The notes: a model not told the origin generated them from the letters alone. A stretch of 7,996 nt of DNA from Octopus sinensis (GCF_006345805.1 NW_021828633.1:1-7996), one strand, 5' to 3'. Shown: positions 263 through 7,996, numbered from the stretch's first letter. Numbers and translations: made by a program.

Positions 263-303
263 TATTCAATACGGCGCTCCATCAATTTTACTAATTCGCC
301 GCT

Positions 304-434
304 TTAGGACTAATTCATCCAGTATATATGAAATACTTTCTTCTTTTTATCCAAGGTAGTAAGGTAAAATTTGAGGGCGATTTACCTGTTCTATCTAACA
401 GGCAGAGTGACCGTATAGATACTCAATCTCACTT
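304..434 (-). mobile_element. Short interspersed repeat family R, copy C (partial, includes ribozyme-like end)
   Basis: TAGGACTAATTCATCC (305-320) and TTTGAGGGCGATTTACCTGTTCTATCTAACAGGCAGAGTGACC (370-412) align with TAGGATTACATTAATC and TTTGAGGGAGATTTGGCTGC...GAGTGAC of the copy at 1515-1726. Confidence 0.75.
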
Positions 435-746
435 TAACCGAAATGGCTTTCAGCGATAATAGAAATCGTGGCTAAAATGTTTCCTGGTGCGAGTACATTC
501 AGCAAATGCATTGTTGCAATAAAACCAATGCCAGAAGGCTAACGGAAAGTCCGTCCAATGATATTGTTCTCATAAGTTTTGGAAATCTGGCAGCAAATGC
601 ATCCCATATTTCACCATTTAACACCACCCATCGCTAACCCACCATTGTTTCAGCTACTGACACTATCATTCTATCGACATCGTGTCTATCTCCGACATCA
701 TCAGTTGACATTGATGCCTTCTTCACACATGCACGTACCCTCCCAT

Positions 747-764
747 CACCACCACCACCACCAC
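747..764. repeat. (CAC)6 microsatellite
   Basis: Read directly from the sequence. Confidence 0.9.
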
Positions 765-1019
765 CCACACATCCAGTCTATGACTCAATCCGGTTTCTTC
801 TCTATGTCAACATGAACAATCGGAAATAATTTGTCATTAACAAGGCAAGTATTTTCGAAATAGATTCAATTATATTTCTTTTGTAATAACCGTTTTCTTA
901 ATTAATAAGTGTAGTGAGGAAATAGTTATTCATACGGATGGATGATTCCACCTCACTCCCTCTAAACTATATCAAGCAAGATAAAGATAAATACAAGAAT
1001 TTTTCTCGAAAACATCTTA

Positions 1020-1063
1020 AATATGGTAGCTTTAGAAGCTCATTGCTATTTCTTCCAGCTCGA
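1020..1063 (-). mobile_element. Family R, weak partial copy H
   Basis: TTGCTATTTCTTCCAGCTCGA (1043-1063) matches the family block TGCTATTTCTAGCAGGTCGA. It lies one unit length (211 bp) upstream of the same block in copy A. Confidence 0.45.
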
Positions 1064-1085
1064 ATAATTGCGATCAAGTTTATCC

Positions 1086-1292
1086 GTTGCTGTCGTTGTT
1101 TAGACGGAGGTCGGCTGTTCGCGAGCGATCACACCTCTTACCAAAAACATTCCATCCGTGACCATTTCATCTTAATTCTGGGGACTACGATATACAATGT
1201 GTCCTCCCTTCATTTACTTAAAACAATTGTGTGTGGTTTTGAAGAAGGTTTGGCTACTATTTTTAACAGGCCAAAAGGCCATGTTGAGTTTC
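1086..1292 (-). mobile_element. Family R, copy A (near full length, decayed)
   Basis: GTT-rich tail (1086-1101), CCATCCGTGACCAT (1152-1165), GGACTACGATATACAATGTGTCC (1182-1204) and TTTGAAGAAGGTTTGGCTACTATTTTTAACAGG (1238-1270) are collinear with the other copies. Confidence 0.8.
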
Positions 1293-1334
1293 TATTATAC
1301 ATTTTTGTGGTTGATAAGTCTTAAGTGTGGCTTG

Positions 1335-1490
1335 ACGGAACATACGTAAAAGGCTCCTCAGCCATGGTTATGCTGTCCTTTTCTTTACCAATAAGTATAC
1401 TCCCGGCTACATATTGCAGTGTGTCTAATTTTAATAAGAGGAACATTTACCTCTTATTTCTAGCAAGTCGAGCAACTTCGCAGGGGTCAT
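1335..1490 (-). mobile_element. Family R, copy D
   Basis: CAGCCATGGTTATG, GGCTACATATTGCAGTGTGTC (1405-1425) and TATTTCTAGCAAGTCGAGC (1455-1473) occur in family order. Confidence 0.7.
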
Positions 1491-1514
1491 TTTTTGACGC
1501 ATATTGTTAAACAT

Positions 1515-1726
1515 TTTGTTATCCAACTTACACCGGGTGAGCGGCCCTTTAAGTAAGGACGATTAGCCGCAACCGTCCTCTCTTTTTTCTGACCCAATAT
1601 ATCTAGGATTACATTAATCAATACACTCTTTTATCTTTTTTTAAAGATAGTAAAATTGTAGTTTGAGGGAGATTTGGCTGCTCTGTCGAGTGACGACATA
1701 ACTTCGTCTCACTCGTTGGCTCACTC
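1515..1726 (-). mobile_element. Family R, copy B (near full length, deletion in the P4-like hairpin)
   Basis: CTAGGATTACATTAATCAAT, TTTGAGGGAGATTTGGCTGCT (1662-1682), GTCGAGTGAC and CTCGTTGGCTC (1712-1722). The last matches the reverse complement of GAGCCAAACGAG at 7343 and GCCAACAAG at 7532. Confidence 0.8.
1665..1726 (-). ncRNA. Candidate degenerate HDV-like ribozyme remnant at the 5' end of family R copy B
   Basis: Minus-strand order: P1a GAGTGA (1726-1721), P2a GAGTGAG (1714-1708), loop region, P1b TCACTC (1693-1688), J4/2 CCAAAT (1677-1672), P2b CTCCCTC (1671-1665). This is pseudoknot topology. P3 and P4 are damaged in this copy. Confidence 0.35.
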
Positions 1727-1939
1727 TTGTATGTTGTTGCGCTGGTGGTACTGATGATGGTGGAGTCGTGTTATTCTTGGTTATATATATATTCTTCTTG
1801 ATTAAATACAAATGTTCACAATATTAAAGGAAGTGTTCTTGAAAGTGGAGATGTTAGAATATTTAGTGTGTCAACTTCAACAAGATTCAAAGCACAAGCA
1901 ATCTTGTTGCAGCTCATAACAACACGTTTTGTGAATTAT

Positions 1940-2106
1940 GTTTGTTCTTTCTCGAGCCACGCCTGGCTCATAAGGGCTGGTTTCCCGTTTTTTTTTTGTT
2001 TTTTTTTGGCGTATAGGTTCCCCACCTGGACGGGACGCCGGTCCGTCGCAGGTGAGTTGCAAGATGCAGGAGGAAAGAGTGAGAGAGTGTTGAGGCGAAA
2101 GAGTCA
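1940..2106 (-). mobile_element. tRNA-derived SINE family S, 5'-truncated copy 1
   Basis: Matches 2510-2663 with 14 mismatches in ~149 aligned nt (counted by hand), excluding a T-rich expansion near 1988-2005. 3' stem-loop GAGCCA/TGGCTC at 1954-1969. Confidence 0.9.
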
Positions 2107-2136
2107 TTGATATCAAAGAGGCATGTCGATATAGAA

Positions 2137-2195
2137 ATGGCTGGCTTAGGTCTATTAACATTCAAGATCTATATCAAGATCGGCTGACATTGCTC
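2137..2195 (+). mobile_element. Family R, possible 3'-half fragment
   Basis: ATGGCTGG (2137-2144) and GGCTGAC (2182-2188) occur in about the spacing expected for the tail-proximal half. Highly diverged. Confidence 0.25.
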
Positions 2196-2492
2196 TATCG
2201 GAAAGTACGAGGTTTGTTATAATCAAAGCCGAAAGTCGAAGGGGCTGGATGGATGACATCCATAATTTTGATATCAACAAATATGAAGATTAAATTTGAG
2301 AAAAAGGTTTTATAATATTCACCGTTCTCAAGAATTTGCCTATAGTTCTGTGAAGAAATTCTTGTAAATATATTCCAACAACGCAAACATGATGAAAATC
2401 CAGTAGAAAATACCTAAAAGTTCACATTAAGGAGTTGAATTTTTTTAAAGGACGCCACGTTCAGTTTAACCTAACCGAAGACACCAAGGTAT

Positions 2493-2772
2493 GTTGTTGT
2501 CTGTTGTTGTTTGTTCCTTCTCAAGCCATGCCTGGCTCATAAGGGCCGGTTTCCCGGTTTCATTGGCGTATAGGTTTCCCACCTGGACGGGACGCTGATC
2601 CGTCGCAGGTGAACTGCTAGATGCAGGAGGAAAGAGTGATAGAAAGTTGTGGCGAAAGAGTCAGCAGAAGTTCGCCATTACCTTCTGTCGGAGACGCGTG
2701 GAGCTCAGCTGCTTCGCTCATAATCACACACATCGCCCGGTTTGCTCTAACCACTAGGCTATGTGCCTCCAC
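2493..2772 (-). mobile_element. tRNA-derived SINE family S, copy 2 (both ends present, B box deleted)
   Basis: Minus strand begins GTGGAGGCACATAGCCTAGTGGTTAGAGCA (tRNA-like head), ends in a stem-loop plus (AAC)n tail, and is flanked by an imperfect direct repeat CACCAAGGTAT (2482-2492) / CACCAAAGGCAT (2773-2784), a likely target-site duplication. Confidence 0.9.
2751..2761 (-). promoter_or_regulatory. Pol III A box of SINE copy 2
   Basis: TAGCCTAGTGG fits TRGCNNARYGG. No GTTCRANNC B box follows, so it is probably non-functional. Confidence 0.65.
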
Positions 2773-3184
2773 CACCAAAGGCATAGTGGCTGATAATTGC
2801 CACAAATCCCTTTCTAACACAGTGAAACAATCGTAAAAAGGGAGTTTTGCTCATTACTAGGTTCTTCTTGGTATCATCTGAGAAATAAAGAATGCGTAAA
2901 ACTGCGCAACATAAGTGGAAATGTTTAATAAAAACACAAAATGGTAATAGGATTCTATTGTGGAATTGAAACCATATCGCTAGCTATACTTGATATGCAT
3001 TTTCATCTGTAAAGCTTTGGCCATAACGATGATAATTATTGACGAAATAGAAAAAAAGATGGGATAAAAATTCCTATTAATAAATGTAATGCCGATAGTA
3101 ATAATGAAAAGGTTGGCTGACAATGATGTTTAGGAAGAAGAGAAAGATGAGGAGGATGGGTAAAGTGAAAGTAGAAGAATATTA

Positions 3185-3359
3185 CTGCTGTTGCTGCTGC
3201 TGCTGCTGATGATGATGATGATGGAAGGATAAGACGGAGGTGGAAGAGGATGCAGAGAGGGAAAAGGGTGTTAATAGTGATGATGACGATATTGATGATA
3301 ACGATGATGATGATAATGATGATGATGACGACGACGGCGACGACCATAATAATGATGAT
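3185..3359. repeat. Compound trinucleotide tracts (GCT)n(GAT)n and (GAT/GAC)n
   Basis: Tracts at 3185-3223 and 3278-3359, read directly. Confidence 0.9.
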
Positions 3360-3430
3360 TACTAAATCAAAAACAGTATAGAATAAAAAAGGCAACACAA
3401 TTTGTTGCCAACTTCATCGGTGGAAGTAGT

Positions 3431-3500
3431 AACAAATAACATTATCAACAACAGCAAAAACAACAAAAACATAAAAAAAAACAATAACAACAATAACAAC
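3431..3500. repeat. Degenerate (AAC)n/A-rich tract
   Basis: AACAACAGCAAAAACAAC...AACAATAACAAC. Opposite polarity to the surrounding GNT tracts. Confidence 0.8.
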
Positions 3501-3654
3501 ATCGTTATAGAAAATTCTTGGTCAGTGAAGTATGGAAAAAAATATAAATTCACAGCTAACATTCACACCCAGTGGATCACGTCGAGAAGTTAGCAGTTTG
3601 GTCCAATCGAAAGCCATTAAATTGTATTTCATGTATGAGTGGACTGGACTGAGG

Positions 3655-5030
3655 TGAGTGGTGGTAAGGGCGGGCGGTGGTGATGAATGGTGTTCGTATT
3701 GGTAGTGGTAGTGGTAGTGGCGGTGATGGTGGTAGTTGTGGTGGTTGTGGTGGTGATTACTGTTGGTGCTGGTATTTCTGAAGGTGGTAGTGGTGACGCT
3801 GGCGGTGAATGGCAATCGTGATGGTAAATGTGGTCTTGATGGTAATAACGATGCTGTTGTTGGTGATATTGATGGTGATTGCAGCAATCGTAGTGGTTGG
3901 TAGCAGTGGTGATGATATCGATAGCGATGGTGCTGGTAGCGGTGTTGCTCGATGATGGTTGTGGGTATGCTACTGGTGGTGATACTGATGGCAACGATGG
4001 CGGAAGTAAAGGTGGTGACGGCAGAGAAAACGAATGTGAAAGTGAAAGTAAAACTAGAAACAAATGCAGGTTGCGATGATGATGATGAAAATATTAGTGA
4101 AGACGGAGATAGAGATGATGGTCATGGTAGTAGACGGAGGTAGTGATGAGGTGTTTGGGGAAAGTCTTGATAATAGGGGTGACGATGATGATGATGATTG
4201 TGGTGGTAGTGAGGATGGGGACAGGATATTTGGTGGTGAAAGGAGGATGAATGGGTTTTAGTTACGGTGCTGCACATGATGTTTCGGATTCTTATGATGG
4301 TGATGATGATAGCGGTGGAAGAGGGTGGGGCGACGAATGTGGAAATAGTGGTGGTGGTGGTGGTGGTGGTGGTGGTGGTGGTGGTGGTGGTGGTGGTGGT
4401 GGTGGTAGCTGTGGTCGTCGTCGCCGTAGTGACGAGGCAACGGTTGAGGAAATTACTGCAGGGGAGACAATCGCGACGACCACGACGACAGCAGTGATGC
4501 TGCTGCTGCTGCTGCTGATGATGATGATGATGGTGTGTATTGCAGTATTGGCGCTTATGACGTGGTTATTAGAGGGAGGTGGCGATGATAGGGATTGATG
4601 TCGAAATGAGTTCAGATTTTATTGTGGTAATGGTGGTAGATATGGTGGTGGTGCTGGTGGTGGCGATGGTGGTGGTGGTGGTGGTGGTGGTGGTGGTGGT
4701 TGTGGTTGTGGTTATGATGGTAGTGGTTGTCGTTGTGATGGTTGTAGTGTTTGTGGTGGTGGTAGTCGTCGTTGTAATGGCTGAGGTGGTGATGGTTCAG
4801 GTGGTGGTGGTGGTGGTTGTAATTGTGGTTTTGATGGTAGTGGTTGTCGTTGTGATGGTTGTAGTGTTTGTGGTGGTGGTAGTCGTCGTTGTAATGGCTG
4901 AGGTGGTGATGGTTCAGGTGGTGCTGGTGGTGGTGGTCGTCGTCGTTAAGGTGATGGTGGTTGCGGTAGTGACGTTTATGATGGTGGTGGTGGTGGTGGT
5001 GGTTGGTAGTTTTGATGATGTTTCAGGTAG
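3655..5030. repeat. Large degenerate GGT/GAT/GTT low-complexity domain, including pure (GGT)19 at 4350-4406
   Basis: Read directly. It produces the poly-V/G/H/P/T ORFs in all frames. Confidence 0.95.
4706..4923. repeat. Tandem duplication with 117 bp period
   Basis: 4715-4806 is identical to 4832-4923 (92 bp). TTGTGGTT at 4706 and 4823 extends the match leftward across one mismatch. Confidence 0.95.
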
Positions 5031-5157
5031 GTGAGAGGTGTTGGCGAGAATTGATATCGTCGTGGTTTTTTAGGAGATATTGCTGTTGTCGTTGACAGTG
5101 AGGTAGGTGTGGGGGGGAGGTTTAGACTTGGAAAGAGAAAGGTTGCTGTACTGGCAG

Positions 5158-5249
5158 TGATGATAATGATAATGACGATGATGATGATGATGATGATGAT
5201 GAGGAGGAGGAGGAGGAGAGAGAAAGAGGGGAAGGAAGAAGAGAAAAAA
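5158..5249. repeat. (GAT)n(GAG)n microsatellite running into a 49 nt homopurine tract (5201-5249)
   Basis: Read directly. Confidence 0.9.
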
Positions 5250-5354
5250 CATAACTGTAATGTGGATTAGTGTTAATGTTGCGATTTTTTTCTTTACAAA
5301 TTCTGATCGCGGTTTTGTATTGACAAGAAATTAGATATTGACACAAATAACGGT

Positions 5355-5435
5355 GGTTAGTTGTTTGTTATTGCAGTTGTTGTTGTTACTGCTGCTGTTG
5401 TAGTTGCTGCTGCTGCTGATGATGATGACGATTCT
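5355..5435. repeat. (GTT)/(GCT)/(GAT) compound tract, probable expanded tail of family R copy E
   Basis: Directly abuts copy E at the position where copy A has its GTT-rich tail. Confidence 0.7.
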
Positions 5436-5439
5436 GATG

Positions 5440-5615
5440 CTTAACCTCAGGTTCATATTGATCTAGTTAACCGCTGAAAAAGTACTCAAGCAATGACTAC
5501 TTTGTCTTTTCCTATGTGTCCTTCTTTTTCTTTTAAAAGCATAGGATTTGAAGAAAATTTGGTTGCTATTTCTAAGTAAAGGCTATGCGACCACATAGAA
5601 ATGTCTTCATTGGCT
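5440..5615 (-). mobile_element. Family R, copy E
   Basis: AACCTCAGGT, ATGTGTCCCTTC, and GATTTGAAGAAAATTTGGTTGCTATTTCTA...GCGACCACATAGA...CATTGGCT (5545-5615) are collinear with copies A and B. Confidence 0.8.
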
Positions 5616-5805
5616 TCTGATTCTGACGATACTATTTAATAGTGATAGCAATAGCGGTATTTCAACCACCCTAACACCATTGCTCCTACCACCATCCGTA
5701 ACATCCTCGCTATCACCATGTCATTAGAAAGAATGAACTGCTGCAAGTAATGGTGGCTGTGACGGAATTTAATGAGGTGCATAAATTGTGACTACAGCGA
5801 TAGTA

Positions 5806-6161
5806 ATGATGATGATAGGAATGATGATGATGATGAATGATGATGATATGAATGATGATGATGATGAGATATGATTATGATAATGATGATGATGATGATG
5901 AGATGAGATAATGATATGATGATGATGATGATAATGATGATGAGATGATGATGATGATGATGATATAATGATGATGATGATGATGATGATAATGATGATG
6001 ATGATGATGATGATGATGATATGATGATGATGATGATGATGATGATGATAATGATGATGATGATGATGATGATAATGATGATGATGATGATGATGATAAT
6101 GATGATAATGATGATAATGATGATGATGATGATGATAATGATGATGATGATGATGATGATA

Positions 6162-6196
<35 letters not shown>

Positions 6197-6197
6197 A

Positions 6198-6229
<32 letters not shown>

Positions 6230-6252
6230 AATGATGATGATGATGATGATGA

Positions 6253-6294
<42 letters not shown>

Positions 6295-6329
6295 AATGAT
6301 GATGATGATGATGATGATGATGATATGAT

Positions 6330-6372
<43 letters not shown>

Positions 6373-6433
6373 ATGATGATGTATGATATGATGATGATGA
6401 ATAATGATGAGATGATGATGATGGATGATGATA

Positions 6434-6495
<62 letters not shown>

Positions 6496-6574
6496 AATGA
6501 TGATAATGATGATGATGATGATAATGATGATGATGATGATGATAATGATGATGATGATGATGATGATGATGATA

Positions 6575-6606
<32 letters not shown>

Positions 6607-6607
6607 A

Positions 6608-6639
<32 letters not shown>

Positions 6640-6656
6640 AATGATGATGATGATGA
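5806..6656. repeat. ~850 bp (ATG/GAT)n microsatellite with AAT variants and phase slips
   Basis: Read directly. Source of the poly-H/I/S/M/D ORFs. Confidence 0.98.
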
Positions 6657-6758
6657 GGAGGAGGTTGTATCCCCTTATGGCAGCGATACAACACTTCACA
6701 GGCACAGGGAGGAATATAGATGTTGCACGGAGGGCAGTCGAACCAAGAAAGAAAGGTC

Positions 6759-6796
<38 letters not shown>

Positions 6797-6801
6797 TGGT
6801 G

Positions 6802-6832
<31 letters not shown>
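6759..6832. repeat. (AT)13 followed by interrupted (GT)n
   Basis: Read directly: AT at 6759-6784, GT at 6785-6832. Confidence 0.95.
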
Positions 6833-6834
<2 letters not shown>

Positions 6835-7043
6835 TGCGTGCCTCTGTTTCTCCTCCCCACCACCGCTTGACAACCGGTGCTGGTGTATTTACGTCCCCGT
6901 AACTTGGCGATTCTGCAAAAGGACCGCTAGAATAAGTACCAGGCTTTTAAAAATTAAGTACTAGAGTCGATATAGTCGACAAAAAATTCTTCATGACAGT
7001 ACTCCTGCATAACCGCAGTTTAATGACTGAAGCAAGTAATAAA
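6833..7043 (+). mobile_element. 3' half of a SINE (Octopus-type family with an internal (AT)/(GT) microsatellite)
   Basis: CCACCGCTTGACAACCGGTGCTGGTGTATTTACGTCCCCGTAACTT...ATAAGTACCAG...GTCGATATAGTCGAC...ATGACTGAAGCAAGTAA matches my recollection of an abundant octopus SINE. In-window support: an ATAAGT...GTCGAT-N4-TCGA block is shared with the minus strand of 7755-7795, and the element ends in a simple-repeat tail. Confidence 0.65.
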
Positions 7044-7304
7044 CATACATACATACATACACGCATGCATTCATACATACATACATACATACATACATAC
7101 ATACATACATACATACATACATACATACACGCATGCATTCATACATACATACATACATACATACATACATACATACATACATACATACATACACGCATGC
7201 ATTCATACATACATACATACATACATACATACATACATACATACATACATACATACATACATACATACATACATACATACATACACGCATGCATTCATAC
7301 ATAC
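7043..7304. repeat. (ACAT)n array with four ACGCATGCATTC interruptions
   Basis: Interruptions start at 7061, 7129, 7193 and 7285. Confidence 0.97.
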
Positions 7305-7342
7305 CTTTTGATAAATGCGTTCACAATGTACAACATCAACTC

Positions 7343-7490
7343 GAGCCAAACGAGGAGTGGATTGTATGATGACCTTTAACTTGTCAGAAATAACAACCAG
7401 GTATCGCTCAAGGAAAAGGAAGGACACATTAGATAATGCAATTCCAAGAGGAACGCCTCTGATCACAGGCCTATTCGATTACGGTAAACT
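7343..7490 (+). mobile_element. Family R, copy F (opposite orientation, internal deletion)
   Basis: GAGCCAAACGAGG, AGAAATAACAACCA and GGAAGGACACATTAGATAATGCAATTCC (7418-7445) are reverse complements of family blocks in copies A, B and E. Confidence 0.75.
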
Positions 7491-7531
7491 TATATAAGTA
7501 ATAATCACAAGAATTGAAATTCTCACTTGAT

Positions 7532-7699
7532 GCCAACAAGGGAACCTAGAAATAGCAGTCAAATATCCTTCGGTCTAGAATATAAAGAGGGATAATATTG
7601 CATAATGTGGTGCTGGACACTCAATGTTGAATAAAGAGCAGGATGGTCGCAGCTGGGATATTTATGATTACAACTCTGTCTAATCGCTCTTGAACCGAC
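7532..7699 (+). mobile_element. Family R, copy G (deletion in the ribozyme-like region)
   Basis: GCCAACAAGGGAACC-TAGAAATAGCAGTCAAATATCCTTC (7532-7571) and GGATGGTCGCAGCTGGG (~7641-7657, reverse complement of the CCA..C..GACCAT block). Confidence 0.75.
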
Positions 7700-7867
7700 A
7701 AAAAATTCTTCCTAAATTTTGGCACAAGGCAAGCAACTTTGATGGGCGTGGGAAATCGATTGCATCGACCCCTGTATTGAACTTAAACTTATACTATCGG
7801 CATAAAGAAGATGACAAGCAAAGTCGACATCGGTGGCTTTTGAACTCAGAAACCAGAAGAAATACCG
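7700..7867 (-). mobile_element. Decayed, 5'-truncated tRNA-derived SINE (resembles octopus OR/OK CORE-type SINEs)
   Basis: Minus strand has a B-box-like GAGTTCAAA (7847-7839), then GTCGACTTTGC, GGGGTCGATGCAATCGA and CCTTGTGCC. Flanked by an exact 11 bp direct repeat CTTGAACCGAC (7689-7699, 7868-7878). Family name is from recollection. Confidence 0.65.
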
Positions 7868-7996
7868 CTTGAACCGACTGCTAAAAGCAACAACTTTAAC
7901 TCTGTTGAAAATGTTCCTTTCTCACCATAAAAATCATACACACAACCAACAATATATTTCAATGAATTGGATGTTTACGCATTTTTTTCATTTGTT

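What the first reader, a model, noticed from the sequence alone, without database searches (positions are those of the whole stretch)
304..7699. Candidate HDV-like ribozyme at the 5' end of a short (~200 nt) non-autonomous retroposon (family R)
Seen in sequence: reading copies A-G on the strand that ends in the (AAC)n-type tail, a hand-built consensus of the first ~65 nt is GAGTGA-GCCAAC-GAGGGA(G)-(A/G)CC-TCWAYRT-GGT-CRCTC-RAC-YTGCTA-GAAA-TAGCAG-CCAAAT-CTCCCTC. This gives the order P1a, P2a, P3a, L3, P3b, P1b, P4 (GAAA tetraloop), J4/2, P2b, which is the nested pseudoknot order of HDV-like ribozymes. L3-type segments: TCAACAT-GGC (copy A, 1278-1287), TCTATGT-GGT (copy E, 5590-5599), TCTATAC-GGT (copy C, 410-419). 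J4/2 CCAA is present in A, B and E. Established knowledge: the 77-79 nt signature of trypanosomatid L1Tc/Ingi and their short derivatives (NARTc, RIME, SIDER) is an HDV-like ribozyme, with core ACC-TCAACGT-GGT and J4/2 C(C/T)AA as I recall it. Inference: family R is a RIME/NARTc-like element in an animal genome that uses a self-cleaving 5' end instead of a tRNA-type Pol III head. No A/B boxes are visible in any copy. Caveats: P1 is only 5-6 bp, P1.1 is not evident, no copy here is intact, and the consensus is partly guided by memory of similar repeats.
Basis: partly seen in the sequence, partly recalled or inferred. Interest (0 to 1): 0.85.

Follow-up and report, generated by a model that had tools for sequence, protein, structure and literature searches.

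The report
Possible ribozyme head on octopus retroposon
The window is octopus DNA holding seven old, decayed copies of a real ~200-nt retroposon whose first ~70 bases can be drawn in the helix order of an HDV-like self-cleaving ribozyme, but the helix that defines the cleavage site is poorly supported, so the ribozyme reading stays plausible and unproven.

Summary
Family R is real. An HMM built from the seven window copies finds more copies in unrelated Octopus vulgaris and O. sinensis loci and in O. vulgaris brain transcripts. The element is about 200-230 nt. It has no tRNA-like head, is often 5'-truncated, has target-site duplications of 7-8 bp, and usually ends in a short AAC/A-rich tail. 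Copies are 69-86% identical to a provisional consensus, so all are old and dead.

Pooling about 16 copies gives this head: GTCAAG-CCAAC-GAGGAAG-ACC-TCWAC(G/A)T-GGT-CA-CTTGAC-CTGCTA-GAAA-TAGCAG-CCAAAT-CTTCCTC. Its helices fall in the HDV-like order P1, P2, P3, P1', P4, P2'.

- **Supported:** the P3/L3 hairpin, the P4 GAAA hairpin and J4/2 CCAAAT recur. L3 variants ACAT, ATGT and ACGT look like CpG decay of UCWACGU. On a hand-anchored alignment 70-72% of cells pair, against 33-50% when partners are slid.
- **Not supported:** P2 is insensitive to register. No P1.1 is evident. No Rfam ribozyme family matches. Two copies lack the core.

Verdict: partly supported. I put about 0.4 on a former HDV-like ribozyme. 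If true it is a new member of a known kind.

The parts
1529..1726 (-). Copy B of family R. Its head is 1665-1726. It is the only copy with GAGTGAGCCAAC at its 5' end. The 5' arm and loop of the P4 hairpin are deleted.
   Evidence: nhmmer E 4e-21 to 1e-27. Sequence read. The nested MFE is a plain long hairpin.
1303..1496 (-). Copy D. It is 5'-truncated or decayed upstream of ACC. It sits directly after the tail of copy B.
   Evidence: nhmmer E 2e-22; alignment.
1088..1306 (-). Copy A. L3 TCAACAT-GGC lies at 1278-1287. The tail is AAACAACGACAGCAACGG. It sits directly after the tail of copy D.
   Evidence: nhmmer E 1e-34 to 4e-39.
287..453 (-). Copy C. Its head is 373-453, with a roughly 12-nt insertion between CCATT and L3. 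The copy is truncated at its 3' side.
   Evidence: nhmmer E 4e-22; sequence.
5438..5618 (-). Copy E. Its head is 5550-5618. It is bounded by the 8-bp direct repeat TCAGAATC at 5619-5626 and 5430-5437. It starts AGAAGCCAAT and has no AAC tail.
   Evidence: nhmmer E 2e-28; direct-repeat search.
7340..7504 (+). Copy G. Its head is 7340-7409. The P4 arms are TTGTCA/TAACAA, which keep pairing through two double changes.
   Evidence: nhmmer E 1.5e-21.
7524..7702 (+). Copy F, the 'short head' form that lacks P3-L3-P1'. It is bounded by the 7-bp direct repeat AAATTCT at 7517-7523 and 7703-7709.
   Evidence: nhmmer E 4e-25; direct-repeat search; the same short form occurs at L049 6430-6219.

Best explanation
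The window is octopus non-coding DNA. Family R is an old, extinct, non-autonomous non-LTR retroposon of about 200-230 nt that a LINE enzyme copied by target-primed reverse transcription.

Its first ~70 nt encoded a compact structured RNA with these parts:
- a 3-bp hairpin with a 7-nt loop (ACC-UCWACGU-GGU; P3/L3);
- a 6-bp GAAA-capped hairpin (P4);
- a purine/pyrimidine long-range helix enclosing both (GAGGAAG/CUUCCUC; P2);
- a 5'-terminal stretch (GUCAAG(CC)) complementary to the strand between P3 and P4 (CUUGAC; P1).

That is the helix order of HDV-like self-cleaving ribozymes.

The most likely function (inferred) is the one known for R2, RTE and L1Tc/NARTc. The element has no promoter of its own and is transcribed as part of host or neighbouring transcripts. 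The 5' fold cuts just upstream of itself, which releases an RNA with a defined 5' end for reverse transcription.

What is shown: the family, its retroposon hallmarks, the recurrent P3/L3, P4 and J4/2 blocks, and the consensus-level complementarity. What is inferred: the pseudoknot, catalysis, and the source of transcription. All copies here are decayed and inactive.
For: **Family and retroposon hallmarks**
- The HMM of the window copies hits independent Octopus loci and transcripts.
- Flanks upstream of the head are unrelated between copies.
- Target-site duplications of 8 and 7 bp bound copies E and F.
- Six of about 20 hits are 5'-truncated.

**Fold**
- On the hand-anchored 16-copy alignment the double pseudoknot pairs 72.1% of cells (70.4% with a gap-free 5' end), against 33-50% when partners are slid.
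- Cells changed on both sides number 19-20 against 11.6-12.2 expected; only 4/500 and 2/500 shuffles reach that.
- The rival extended hairpin reaches only 58.7%.
- P4 is register-specific: 74% paired against 13-52% slid, with four pairs changed on both sides.
- Transcript copy comp3639 carries perfect helices of 6 bp (P1) and 8 bp (P2) in HDV order; 0 of 200 dinucleotide shuffles match it.
- The 5' end versus junction duplex lies among the best ~5% of control windows of the same copy in wB, c3639, c2582 and c3771.

**Core sequence features**
- L3 variants ACAT, ATGT and ACGT fit CpG decay of UCWACGU.
- J4/2 CCAAAU contains the C-N-A-A pattern.
- A 5-nt J1/2 is compatible with active HDV-like ribozymes (PMC4908430).
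- HDV-like ribozymes at retrotransposon 5' ends, including non-autonomous derivatives, are established (PMC3185411, PMC4035085, PMC3414825, PMC6765202).
Against: - **No database match.** No Rfam HDV-like or other ribozyme family hits the window at E <= 10, nor the other octopus loci at gathering score.
- **P1 is weak.** P1 alone pairs 66.7% of cells, 121/500 shuffles reach that, and its two outer pairs are unpaired in 4-5 of 7 copies. The four copies with a good 5'/junction duplex use different registers, and three copies have none.
- **P2 is not register-specific.** It pairs just as well when slid by one column (69%), as expected of a purine tract facing a pyrimidine tract.
- **Core departures from HDV-like ribozymes.** Two nucleotides (CA) separate P3 from P1'. 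There is no J1/4, so no P1.1 can be drawn. The first P1 pair is G-C or A-U, not G.U.
- **5' terminus is not fixed.** The duplications of E and F and the flanks of c2582, c3771 and wB leave it uncertain by 2-6 nt, so it does not clearly coincide with the first nucleotide of P1.
- **Two copies lack the core.** F and L049a lack P3-L3-P1'.
- **The descriptor is not rare.** 3% of random 87-nt octopus windows reach the score of comp3639.
- **The alignment is my own.** The 5' part was anchored by hand with the model in mind. With dead copies, most variation is neutral decay rather than selected covariation.
Confidence: 0.4

Rival explanations
1. The head is a structured but non-catalytic 5' module, probably taken from the 5' UTR of a LINE as in the 'LP-SINEs' of other molluscs. 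It would act as an internal Pol II promoter, a translation or stability element, or a recognition site for the LINE protein. The P2-P3-P4 three-way junction would be real and the pseudoknot with the 5' end incidental.
For: - Mollusc SINEs with about 70-bp heads derived from Nimb or RTE LINEs, and no tRNA part, are documented; their authors interpret the head as a promoter (PMC4758252).
- The nested P2+P4 fold is the minimum-energy structure of the reconstructed consensus, z -3.3.
- P1 support is weak and P1.1 is absent.
- The best-conserved 5' motif is RAGCCAAY, which would be only a linker in the ribozyme model.
- In L1Tc the same 77 nt act as both promoter and ribozyme (PMC3383444), so a promoter role is not exotic.
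Against: - No LINE carrying this head was found in 155 kb of octopus DNA. The one LINE 3' end seen has a different 3' region and an (ATG)n tail.
- The L3 and J4/2 sequence pattern and the 5'/junction complementarity are left unexplained.
- The LP-SINE head sequence could not be obtained, so homology is untested.
Confidence: 0.3
2. An ordinary old short retroposon whose 5' region has no selected long-range structure. The HDV-like drawing comes from building a composite consensus from decayed, low-complexity copies and from a local GAAA hairpin.
For: - No single window copy forms the fold.
- Per-helix shuffle controls are individually non-significant: P1 121/500, P2 152/500, P4 141/500 for percent paired.
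- 3% of random octopus windows satisfy a perfect-helix HDV descriptor at the score of the best copy.
Against: - The whole structure beats slid partners by 20-35 percentage points, and double-change cells reach the observed number in only 2-4 of 500 shuffles.
- P4 shows several pair-preserving double changes.
- Four copies keep a strong 5'/junction duplex.
- The consensus P2 strands are exact complements.
Confidence: 0.2
3. The head is a different self-cleaving motif (twister-like or hammerhead-like), as found at the 5' ends of Schistosoma non-LTR elements, in Penelope-like elements and in retrozymes. The head-to-tail arrays in the window would then reflect retrozyme-like tandem units.
For: - Copies are head-to-tail in the window: B-D-A, and G-F.
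- A CUGAUGAG-like string lies just upstream of GTCAAG in c2582, c3771 and L049a.
- Twister variants function at non-LTR 5' ends (PMC8501958).
Against: - No Rfam hammerhead, twister, pistol or hatchet hit at E <= 10.
- GAAA does not follow the would-be helix II, so no hammerhead core can be drawn.
- The GATGAG string is absent from most copies.
- The tandem copies are separated by tails and differ in truncation, which fits insertion into earlier tails rather than unit repeats.
Confidence: 0.05

Closest known systems
L1TcRz, the HDV-like ribozyme in the Pr77 hallmark of trypanosomatid L1Tc/ingi and their short derivatives NARTc, RIME and SIDER
   Same: - A roughly 77-nt module at the extreme 5' end, shared by autonomous and short non-autonomous retroposons.
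- Cleavage at nucleotide +1 defines the element's 5' end (PMC3185411, PMC4035085).
- A P3b-like GGU(G) precedes P1', and J4/2 has C-N-A-A. The L1Tc primers give ...TGGTGCCAGGG... and ...GCTAAGCG....
- L3 is recalled as UCAACGU, the same as the ancestral L3 inferred here.
   Different: - The host is a kinetoplastid, not an animal.
- L1Tc P1' follows P3 directly and begins C1; here there is a 2-nt spacer and a weak P1.
- L1TcRz activity was shown at the bench; nothing has been shown here.
- The L1Tc L3 sequence could not be verified from text held here: only nt 1-15 and 27-77 are available.
R2 HDV-like ribozymes and R2-derived SIDEs (internally deleted non-autonomous elements) in Drosophila
   Same: An animal non-autonomous element that keeps a 5' HDV-like ribozyme and a 3' end recognised by the LINE protein, and that depends on co-transcription (PMC3414825, PMC3774820).
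   Different: R2 and its SIDEs are specific to the 28S rDNA site and are clearly derived from a known LINE. Family R is dispersed, has a simple-repeat tail, and has no identified parent LINE.
HDV-like ribozymes at the 5' ends of RTE and baggins elements (for example drz-Agam-2)
   Same: Promoter-less non-LTR elements processed out of host transcripts. A J1/2 linker of several nucleotides is tolerated or required (PMC6765202; PMC4908430). Elements of this class carry microsatellite-type tails.
   Different: Those ribozymes have a canonical P1 and P1.1 and proven activity. No sequence similarity was detectable by Rfam models.
LP-SINEs of gastropods and bivalves (Lsa_2, Hdi/Hmi_LP, Sgl_LP, pectinoid MESC SINEs)
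   Same: Mollusc short retroposons with variable target-site duplications and simple-repeat tails. Their roughly 68-70-bp head is not derived from a small RNA but is shared with LINE 5' ends (PMC4758252).
   Different: Their authors interpret the head as a promoter. No structure or ribozyme has been proposed. Sequence homology to family R is unknown because the figure and sequences are not held.

Membership tests
HDV-like self-cleaving ribozymes | Helix order P1-P2-P3-P1'-P4-P2' (nested pseudoknot) | tested here: inconclusive
   The family consensus and transcript copy comp3639 can be drawn this way. 70-72% of cells pair against 33-50% when slid. No window copy forms it, and the 5' alignment is hand-anchored.
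HDV-like self-cleaving ribozymes | P1 of about 6-7 bp whose first nucleotide is the cleavage site and the 5' end of the element | tested here: inconclusive
GTCAAG/CTTGAC is good in c2582 and c3639 and partial in wB and c3771. Only 3-4 positions pair consistently, and 121/500 shuffles reach the observed percentage. Target-site duplications leave the 5' end uncertain by 2-6 nt.
HDV-like self-cleaving ribozymes | P1.1 (1-2 bp between L3 and J1/4), which makes the second pseudoknot | tested here: not met
   P1' is followed directly by P4 with no J1/4, and no complementary dinucleotide is available (alignment).
HDV-like self-cleaving ribozymes | P3 of about 3 bp closing a roughly 7-nt L3 that forms part of the core | tested here: met
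   ACC/GGT with a 7-nt loop. 68% of cells pair. L3 variants ACAT, ATGT and ACGT imply an ancestral UCWACGU. The P3a side is poorly conserved.
HDV-like self-cleaving ribozymes | J4/2 carrying the catalytic C followed by purines (C-N-A-A) | tested here: met
   CCAAAT, or a one-base variant, in 11 of 15 copies. This is a match by sequence only; a catalytic role is untested.
HDV-like self-cleaving ribozymes | Match to curated covariance models (HDV_ribozyme, CPEB3, drz-Agam and others) | tested here: not met
   No ribozyme family among 57 matches at E <= 10 in the window, and none at gathering score in 106 kb of octopus loci. This test is weak, because those models cover few lineages and cannot score pseudoknots.
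HDV-like self-cleaving ribozymes | Site-specific Mg2+-dependent self-scission | not testable with these tools
   Needs a bench assay.
Non-autonomous non-LTR retroposon (SINE-like) | Dispersed copies with unrelated flanks, target-site duplications, 5' truncation and a simple-repeat or A-rich 3' tail | tested here: met
   Copies in four unlinked Octopus loci and five transcripts. Duplications of 8 and 7 bp. Six 5'-truncated hits. AAC-rich tails in A, L049a, L049b and c2582; none in E.
Canonical SINE | Head derived from tRNA, 5S, 7SL or snRNA with a Pol III promoter | tested here: not met
   ARAGORN finds no tRNA. No small-RNA family hits the copies. The consensus has no A or B box.
LP-SINE (head derived from a LINE 5' UTR) | Head homologous to the first ~70 nt of a LINE (Nimb-17_LMi, I-3_DR, RTE-9_CPB type) | not testable with these tools
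   The sequences of those heads are not in the held text. No full-length LINE was available from octopus.

The most novel reading that the evidence does not exclude
The family R head is a true, formerly active HDV-like ribozyme module in cephalopods. Its P3-L3 core (ACC-UCAACGU-GGU) would match that of the trypanosomatid L1Tc ribozyme, and it would be the same kind of module as the unexplained ~70-bp 'LINE-promoter' heads of LP-SINEs in other molluscs. Those heads, shared between Nimb and RTE LINEs and SINEs across phyla, would then be mobile ribozyme cassettes rather than promoters.
Probability: 0.12. Interest if true: 0.7.

Novelty: new member of a known kind. Interest (0 to 1): 0.42.

Why it matters
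If the head is a ribozyme, it would be the first HDV-like ribozyme described in a cephalopod repeat, as far as my searches show (one search found none). It would also be another animal example of a short non-autonomous retroposon that replaces a Pol III head with a self-cleaving 5' end. That would point to how promoter-less elements spread through octopus introns and UTRs; brain transcripts carry copies.

It would also offer a testable explanation for the LINE-derived heads of mollusc LP-SINEs.

If it is not a ribozyme, family R is simply one more old octopus repeat, and the finding is ordinary.

Tried and rejected
1. **DNA pattern scans.** Family R and the young tRNA-SINE were sought in viral, JGI metagenome and GTDB genome collections. 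The viral scan gave only chance hits, and the four metagenome and genome scans (two patterns each) found nothing. The window's own copy E was not found either, so the window is not from those sets.
2. **Exact look-ups of window ORFs.** Not on record.
3. **Getting octopus DNA through proteins.** A SINE-derived ORF led to P0001 and locus L049. A LANCL3 transcript led to L050 and L051. An RT fragment led to L052. Argonauta L053 holds no copy. The yield was only about 1 copy per 15-40 kb.
4. **LINE partner.** The only LINE 3' end seen (L051 14924-15448, minus strand) has an unrelated 3' UTR and an (ATG)n tail, so it was rejected as the partner.
5. **Homology upstream of the head.** An apparent GACAATGAT match was not supported by BLAST.
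6. **Hammerhead reading of CUGAUGAG-like strings.** No GAAA follows the would-be helix II, and the string is absent from most copies.
7. **U2-snRNA-like GGCCTTTTGGC in copy A.** Specific to that copy; chance.
8. **Permissive HDV descriptor.** It hits almost everything. The strict version hits 3% of background windows, so it is not decisive.
9. **Repeat library or RepeatMasker name for the family.** The held part of the Petrosino output lists nothing for comp2582. The 2026 O. vulgaris repeat paper has no library held.
10. **Ruminski 2011 and Webb 2009.** Not held.
11. **L3 of L1Tc.** Could not be verified from text.

Full report
**What the window is**

The 7996 bases are repeat-rich non-coding animal DNA.
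- Trinucleotide microsatellites of the GGT, GAT, GCT and ATG type fill about 3100-5450 and 5780-6660. An (ACAT)n array fills 7030-7310.
- ORFs are microsatellite or repeat read-throughs.
- An ORF inside a tRNA-derived SINE (1880-2161, minus strand) is 82% identical to a 'hypothetical predicted protein' of Octopus vulgaris. The encoding locus lies on O. vulgaris chromosome OX597823.1. The window is therefore octopod DNA.
- None of the DNA collections on hand (viral, JGI metagenomes, GTDB genomes) contains family R or that SINE.

**Is family R real?**

Plain self-BLAST only hints at it, with about 70% identity over 30-70 nt and best E 0.001. It recovers them and also finds independent copies:
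- three in L049;
- after iteration, 20-23 hits across 155 kb of Octopus DNA and transcripts.

These include an orthologous pair in O. vulgaris and O. sinensis (L050 8760-8601 and L051 8775-8614). Further copies lie in O. vulgaris brain transcripts comp2582 (two copies), comp3375, comp3639 and comp3771, found by k-mer search in the supplement of PMC9115989.

The features of the element are these:
- It is about 200-230 nt and ends ...CAGGACTGACCTGAGGCTAAAC, usually followed by a short AAC/A-rich tail.
- Six hits are 5'-truncated.
- Upstream flanks are unrelated between copies.
- Copy E is bracketed by the 8-bp repeat TCAGAATC and copy F by the 7-bp repeat AAATTCT.
- There is no tRNA or other small-RNA head.
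- Copies are 69-86% identical to a provisional consensus, Jukes-Cantor distance 0.16-0.40. On the calibration quoted in PMC13282606 (JC 0.2 is about 56 My) that means tens of millions of years.
- None was found in a 26.5-kb Argonauta locus, which is too little DNA to draw a conclusion.

The three L3 coordinates are exact.

**The head**

Pooling about 16 copies gives this consensus:

(GA)GTCAAG-CCAAC-GAGGAAG-ACC-TCWAC(G/A)T-GGT-CA-CTTGAC-CTGCTA-GAAA-TAGCAG-CCAAAT-CTTCCTC-AAATCA.

'GAGTGA' is peculiar to copy B. Other copies have GTCAAG, ATCAAG, CAGAAG, CTCGAG or GATGAG before the well-conserved GCCAAY.

L3 occurs as ..ACAT (A, comp3639, L051a)..ATGT (E, B, comp2582) and ..ACGT (comp3771). That is the pattern expected from CpG decay of an ancestral UCWACGU. 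By recollection this equals the L1Tc L3 and resembles the CPEB3 L3. From text held here I could verify only L1Tc nt 1-15 and 27-77, which do show GGUG-CCAGGG and a C-U-A-A J4/2.

**Testing the fold**

I wrote the copies into a 74-column alignment anchored on sequence blocks, with gaps as N (A2). I also made a variant whose 5' end is simply right-justified on the CC anchor (A3).

| Structure tested | Cells paired | Slid partners | Double-change cells | Shuffles reaching observed % paired |
|---|---|---|---|---|
| Double pseudoknot, A2 / A3 | 72.1% / 70.4% | 33-50% | 19 / 20 (expected 11.6 / 12.2; 4 and 2 of 500 shuffles reach this) | 13 / 20 of 500 |
| Rival: P3 extended into a long plain hairpin | 58.7% (helix) | - | - | - |
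| P4 alone | 74% | 13-52% | four pairs changed on both sides | 141 of 500 |
| P2 alone | 69% | 69% when slid by one column | - | 152 of 500 |
| P1 alone | 66.7% | 28-42% | - | 121 of 500 |

The rival hairpin was suggested by copies B, C and comp3375. P2 is a purine tract facing a pyrimidine tract, so its register is not informative. In P1 the inner three pairs carry the signal, and the outer two are unpaired in 4-5 of 7 copies.

Duplex energies between the 5' end and the P3-P4 junction are among the best ~5% of control windows in wB, comp3639, comp2582 and comp3771. They use different registers, however, and wE, wG and wC show nothing.

A strict perfect-helix HDV descriptor scores 16 for the real sequence comp3639 (P1 6 bp, P2 8 bp). 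No dinucleotide shuffle out of 200 reaches that, yet 3% of random 87-nt octopus windows do. Nested folding of my reconstructed consensus keeps P2 and P4, z -3.3.

No Rfam ribozyme family matches the window at E <= 10 or the other loci at gathering score.

**Departures from canonical HDV-like ribozymes**

The defining features are taken from PMC4908430: P1 stacks on P1.1 and P4, P2 stacks on P3, cleavage is at the first P1 nucleotide, and the core is built from L3 and J4/2.
- Two nucleotides (CA) separate P3 from P1'.
- There is no J1/4 and hence no P1.1.
- The first P1 pair is G-C or A-U.
- The 5' terminus inferred from target-site duplications and flanks is uncertain by 2-6 nt. E starts AGAAGCC, F starts CACTTGATGCC, and c2582 and c3771 carry GATGAG upstream.
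- Two copies, F and L049 6430-6219, lack P3-L3-P1' altogether. This is either a recurrent deletion between GACC repeats or a subfamily that spread without the core.

**Interpretation**

The retroposon is real and ordinary in kind. Its head very probably carried selected RNA structure, at least the P4 hairpin and probably the P2-P3-P4 junction. The HDV-like pseudoknot is the best single explanation for three things together: the helix order, the L3 and J4/2 sequence pattern, and the position at the extreme 5' end of a promoter-less element. That arrangement is well known from R2, RTE and L1Tc/NARTc/SIDER.

The evidence for P1 is weak, P1.1 is missing, and all copies are dead. I therefore give the ribozyme about 0.4, a non-catalytic LINE-derived head like the mollusc LP-SINEs (PMC4758252) about 0.3, and chance about 0.2.

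If true, this is a new member of a known kind. A genome-wide consensus and a simple cleavage assay would settle it.

Noticed in passing
window 1088-1726 (-) and 7340-7702 (+): Family R copies lie head-to-tail: B then D then A on the minus strand, and G then F on the plus strand. Each starts in or just after the decayed tail of the previous copy. The window holds 7 copies in 8 kb, against about 1 per 15-40 kb in other octopus loci. This suggests a preference for inserting into the family's own tails or into microsatellites.
   Followed up: partly
window 7524-7702 and L049 6430-6219: Two independent copies share a 'short head' that lacks P3-L3-P1' (GCCAAC-ARGGGA-..-WAGAAAYAGCAG). This is either a recurrent deletion between GACC direct repeats or a subfamily that amplified without the putative catalytic core.
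   Followed up: partly
window 2490-2770 (-) and 1939-2106 (-): A younger tRNA-derived SINE with an (AAC)n tail; the two copies are 83-91% identical. An ORF within it matches an annotated O. vulgaris 'hypothetical predicted / secreted protein' (P0001), which therefore looks like a repeat-derived gene call.
   Followed up: partly
window 3100-5450 and 5780-6660; L051 14400-15448 (-): Very long (GGT/GAT/GCT)n and (ATG)n arrays. An octopus LINE 3' end in L051 has an RT C-terminus ...GRGRPRKTWDKVVKQDL..., a long 3' UTR and then an (ATG)n tail. Some of these arrays may therefore be expanded LINE or SINE tails.
   Followed up: no
window 6850-7030 (+) and 7725-7900 (+): Decayed copies of two other repeats that I recognise from memory as abundant octopus SINE-like repeats. 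The first ends in the (ACAT)n array at 7030-7310. The Rfam 'mir-297', 'mir-3149' and 'mir-1277' matches in that array are microsatellite artefacts far below gathering score.
   Followed up: no
comp2582 nt 187-197, comp3771 (reverse strand), L049 about 6432-6445, window about 1726-1731: A GATGAG / CTGATG string sits immediately upstream of GTCAAG or GAGCC in several copies. It resembles the hammerhead CUGAUGAG core, but no hammerhead can be completed. It may mean the element's true 5' end lies a few nucleotides further upstream than P1.
   Followed up: partly
family consensus ends (for example L049 6430-6219): The 5' end GTCAAGCC and the 3' end GGCTAAAC are partly complementary (6 of 8 positions), which gives a possible 5'-3' panhandle. 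It may be chance.
   Followed up: no
L050 8680-8830 versus L051 8690-8830: The orthologous family R copy differs between O. vulgaris and O. sinensis by a 13-nt insertion or duplication (CTGTGGATATTAC) in the head. The insertion of the copy predates the split of the two species.
   Followed up: no
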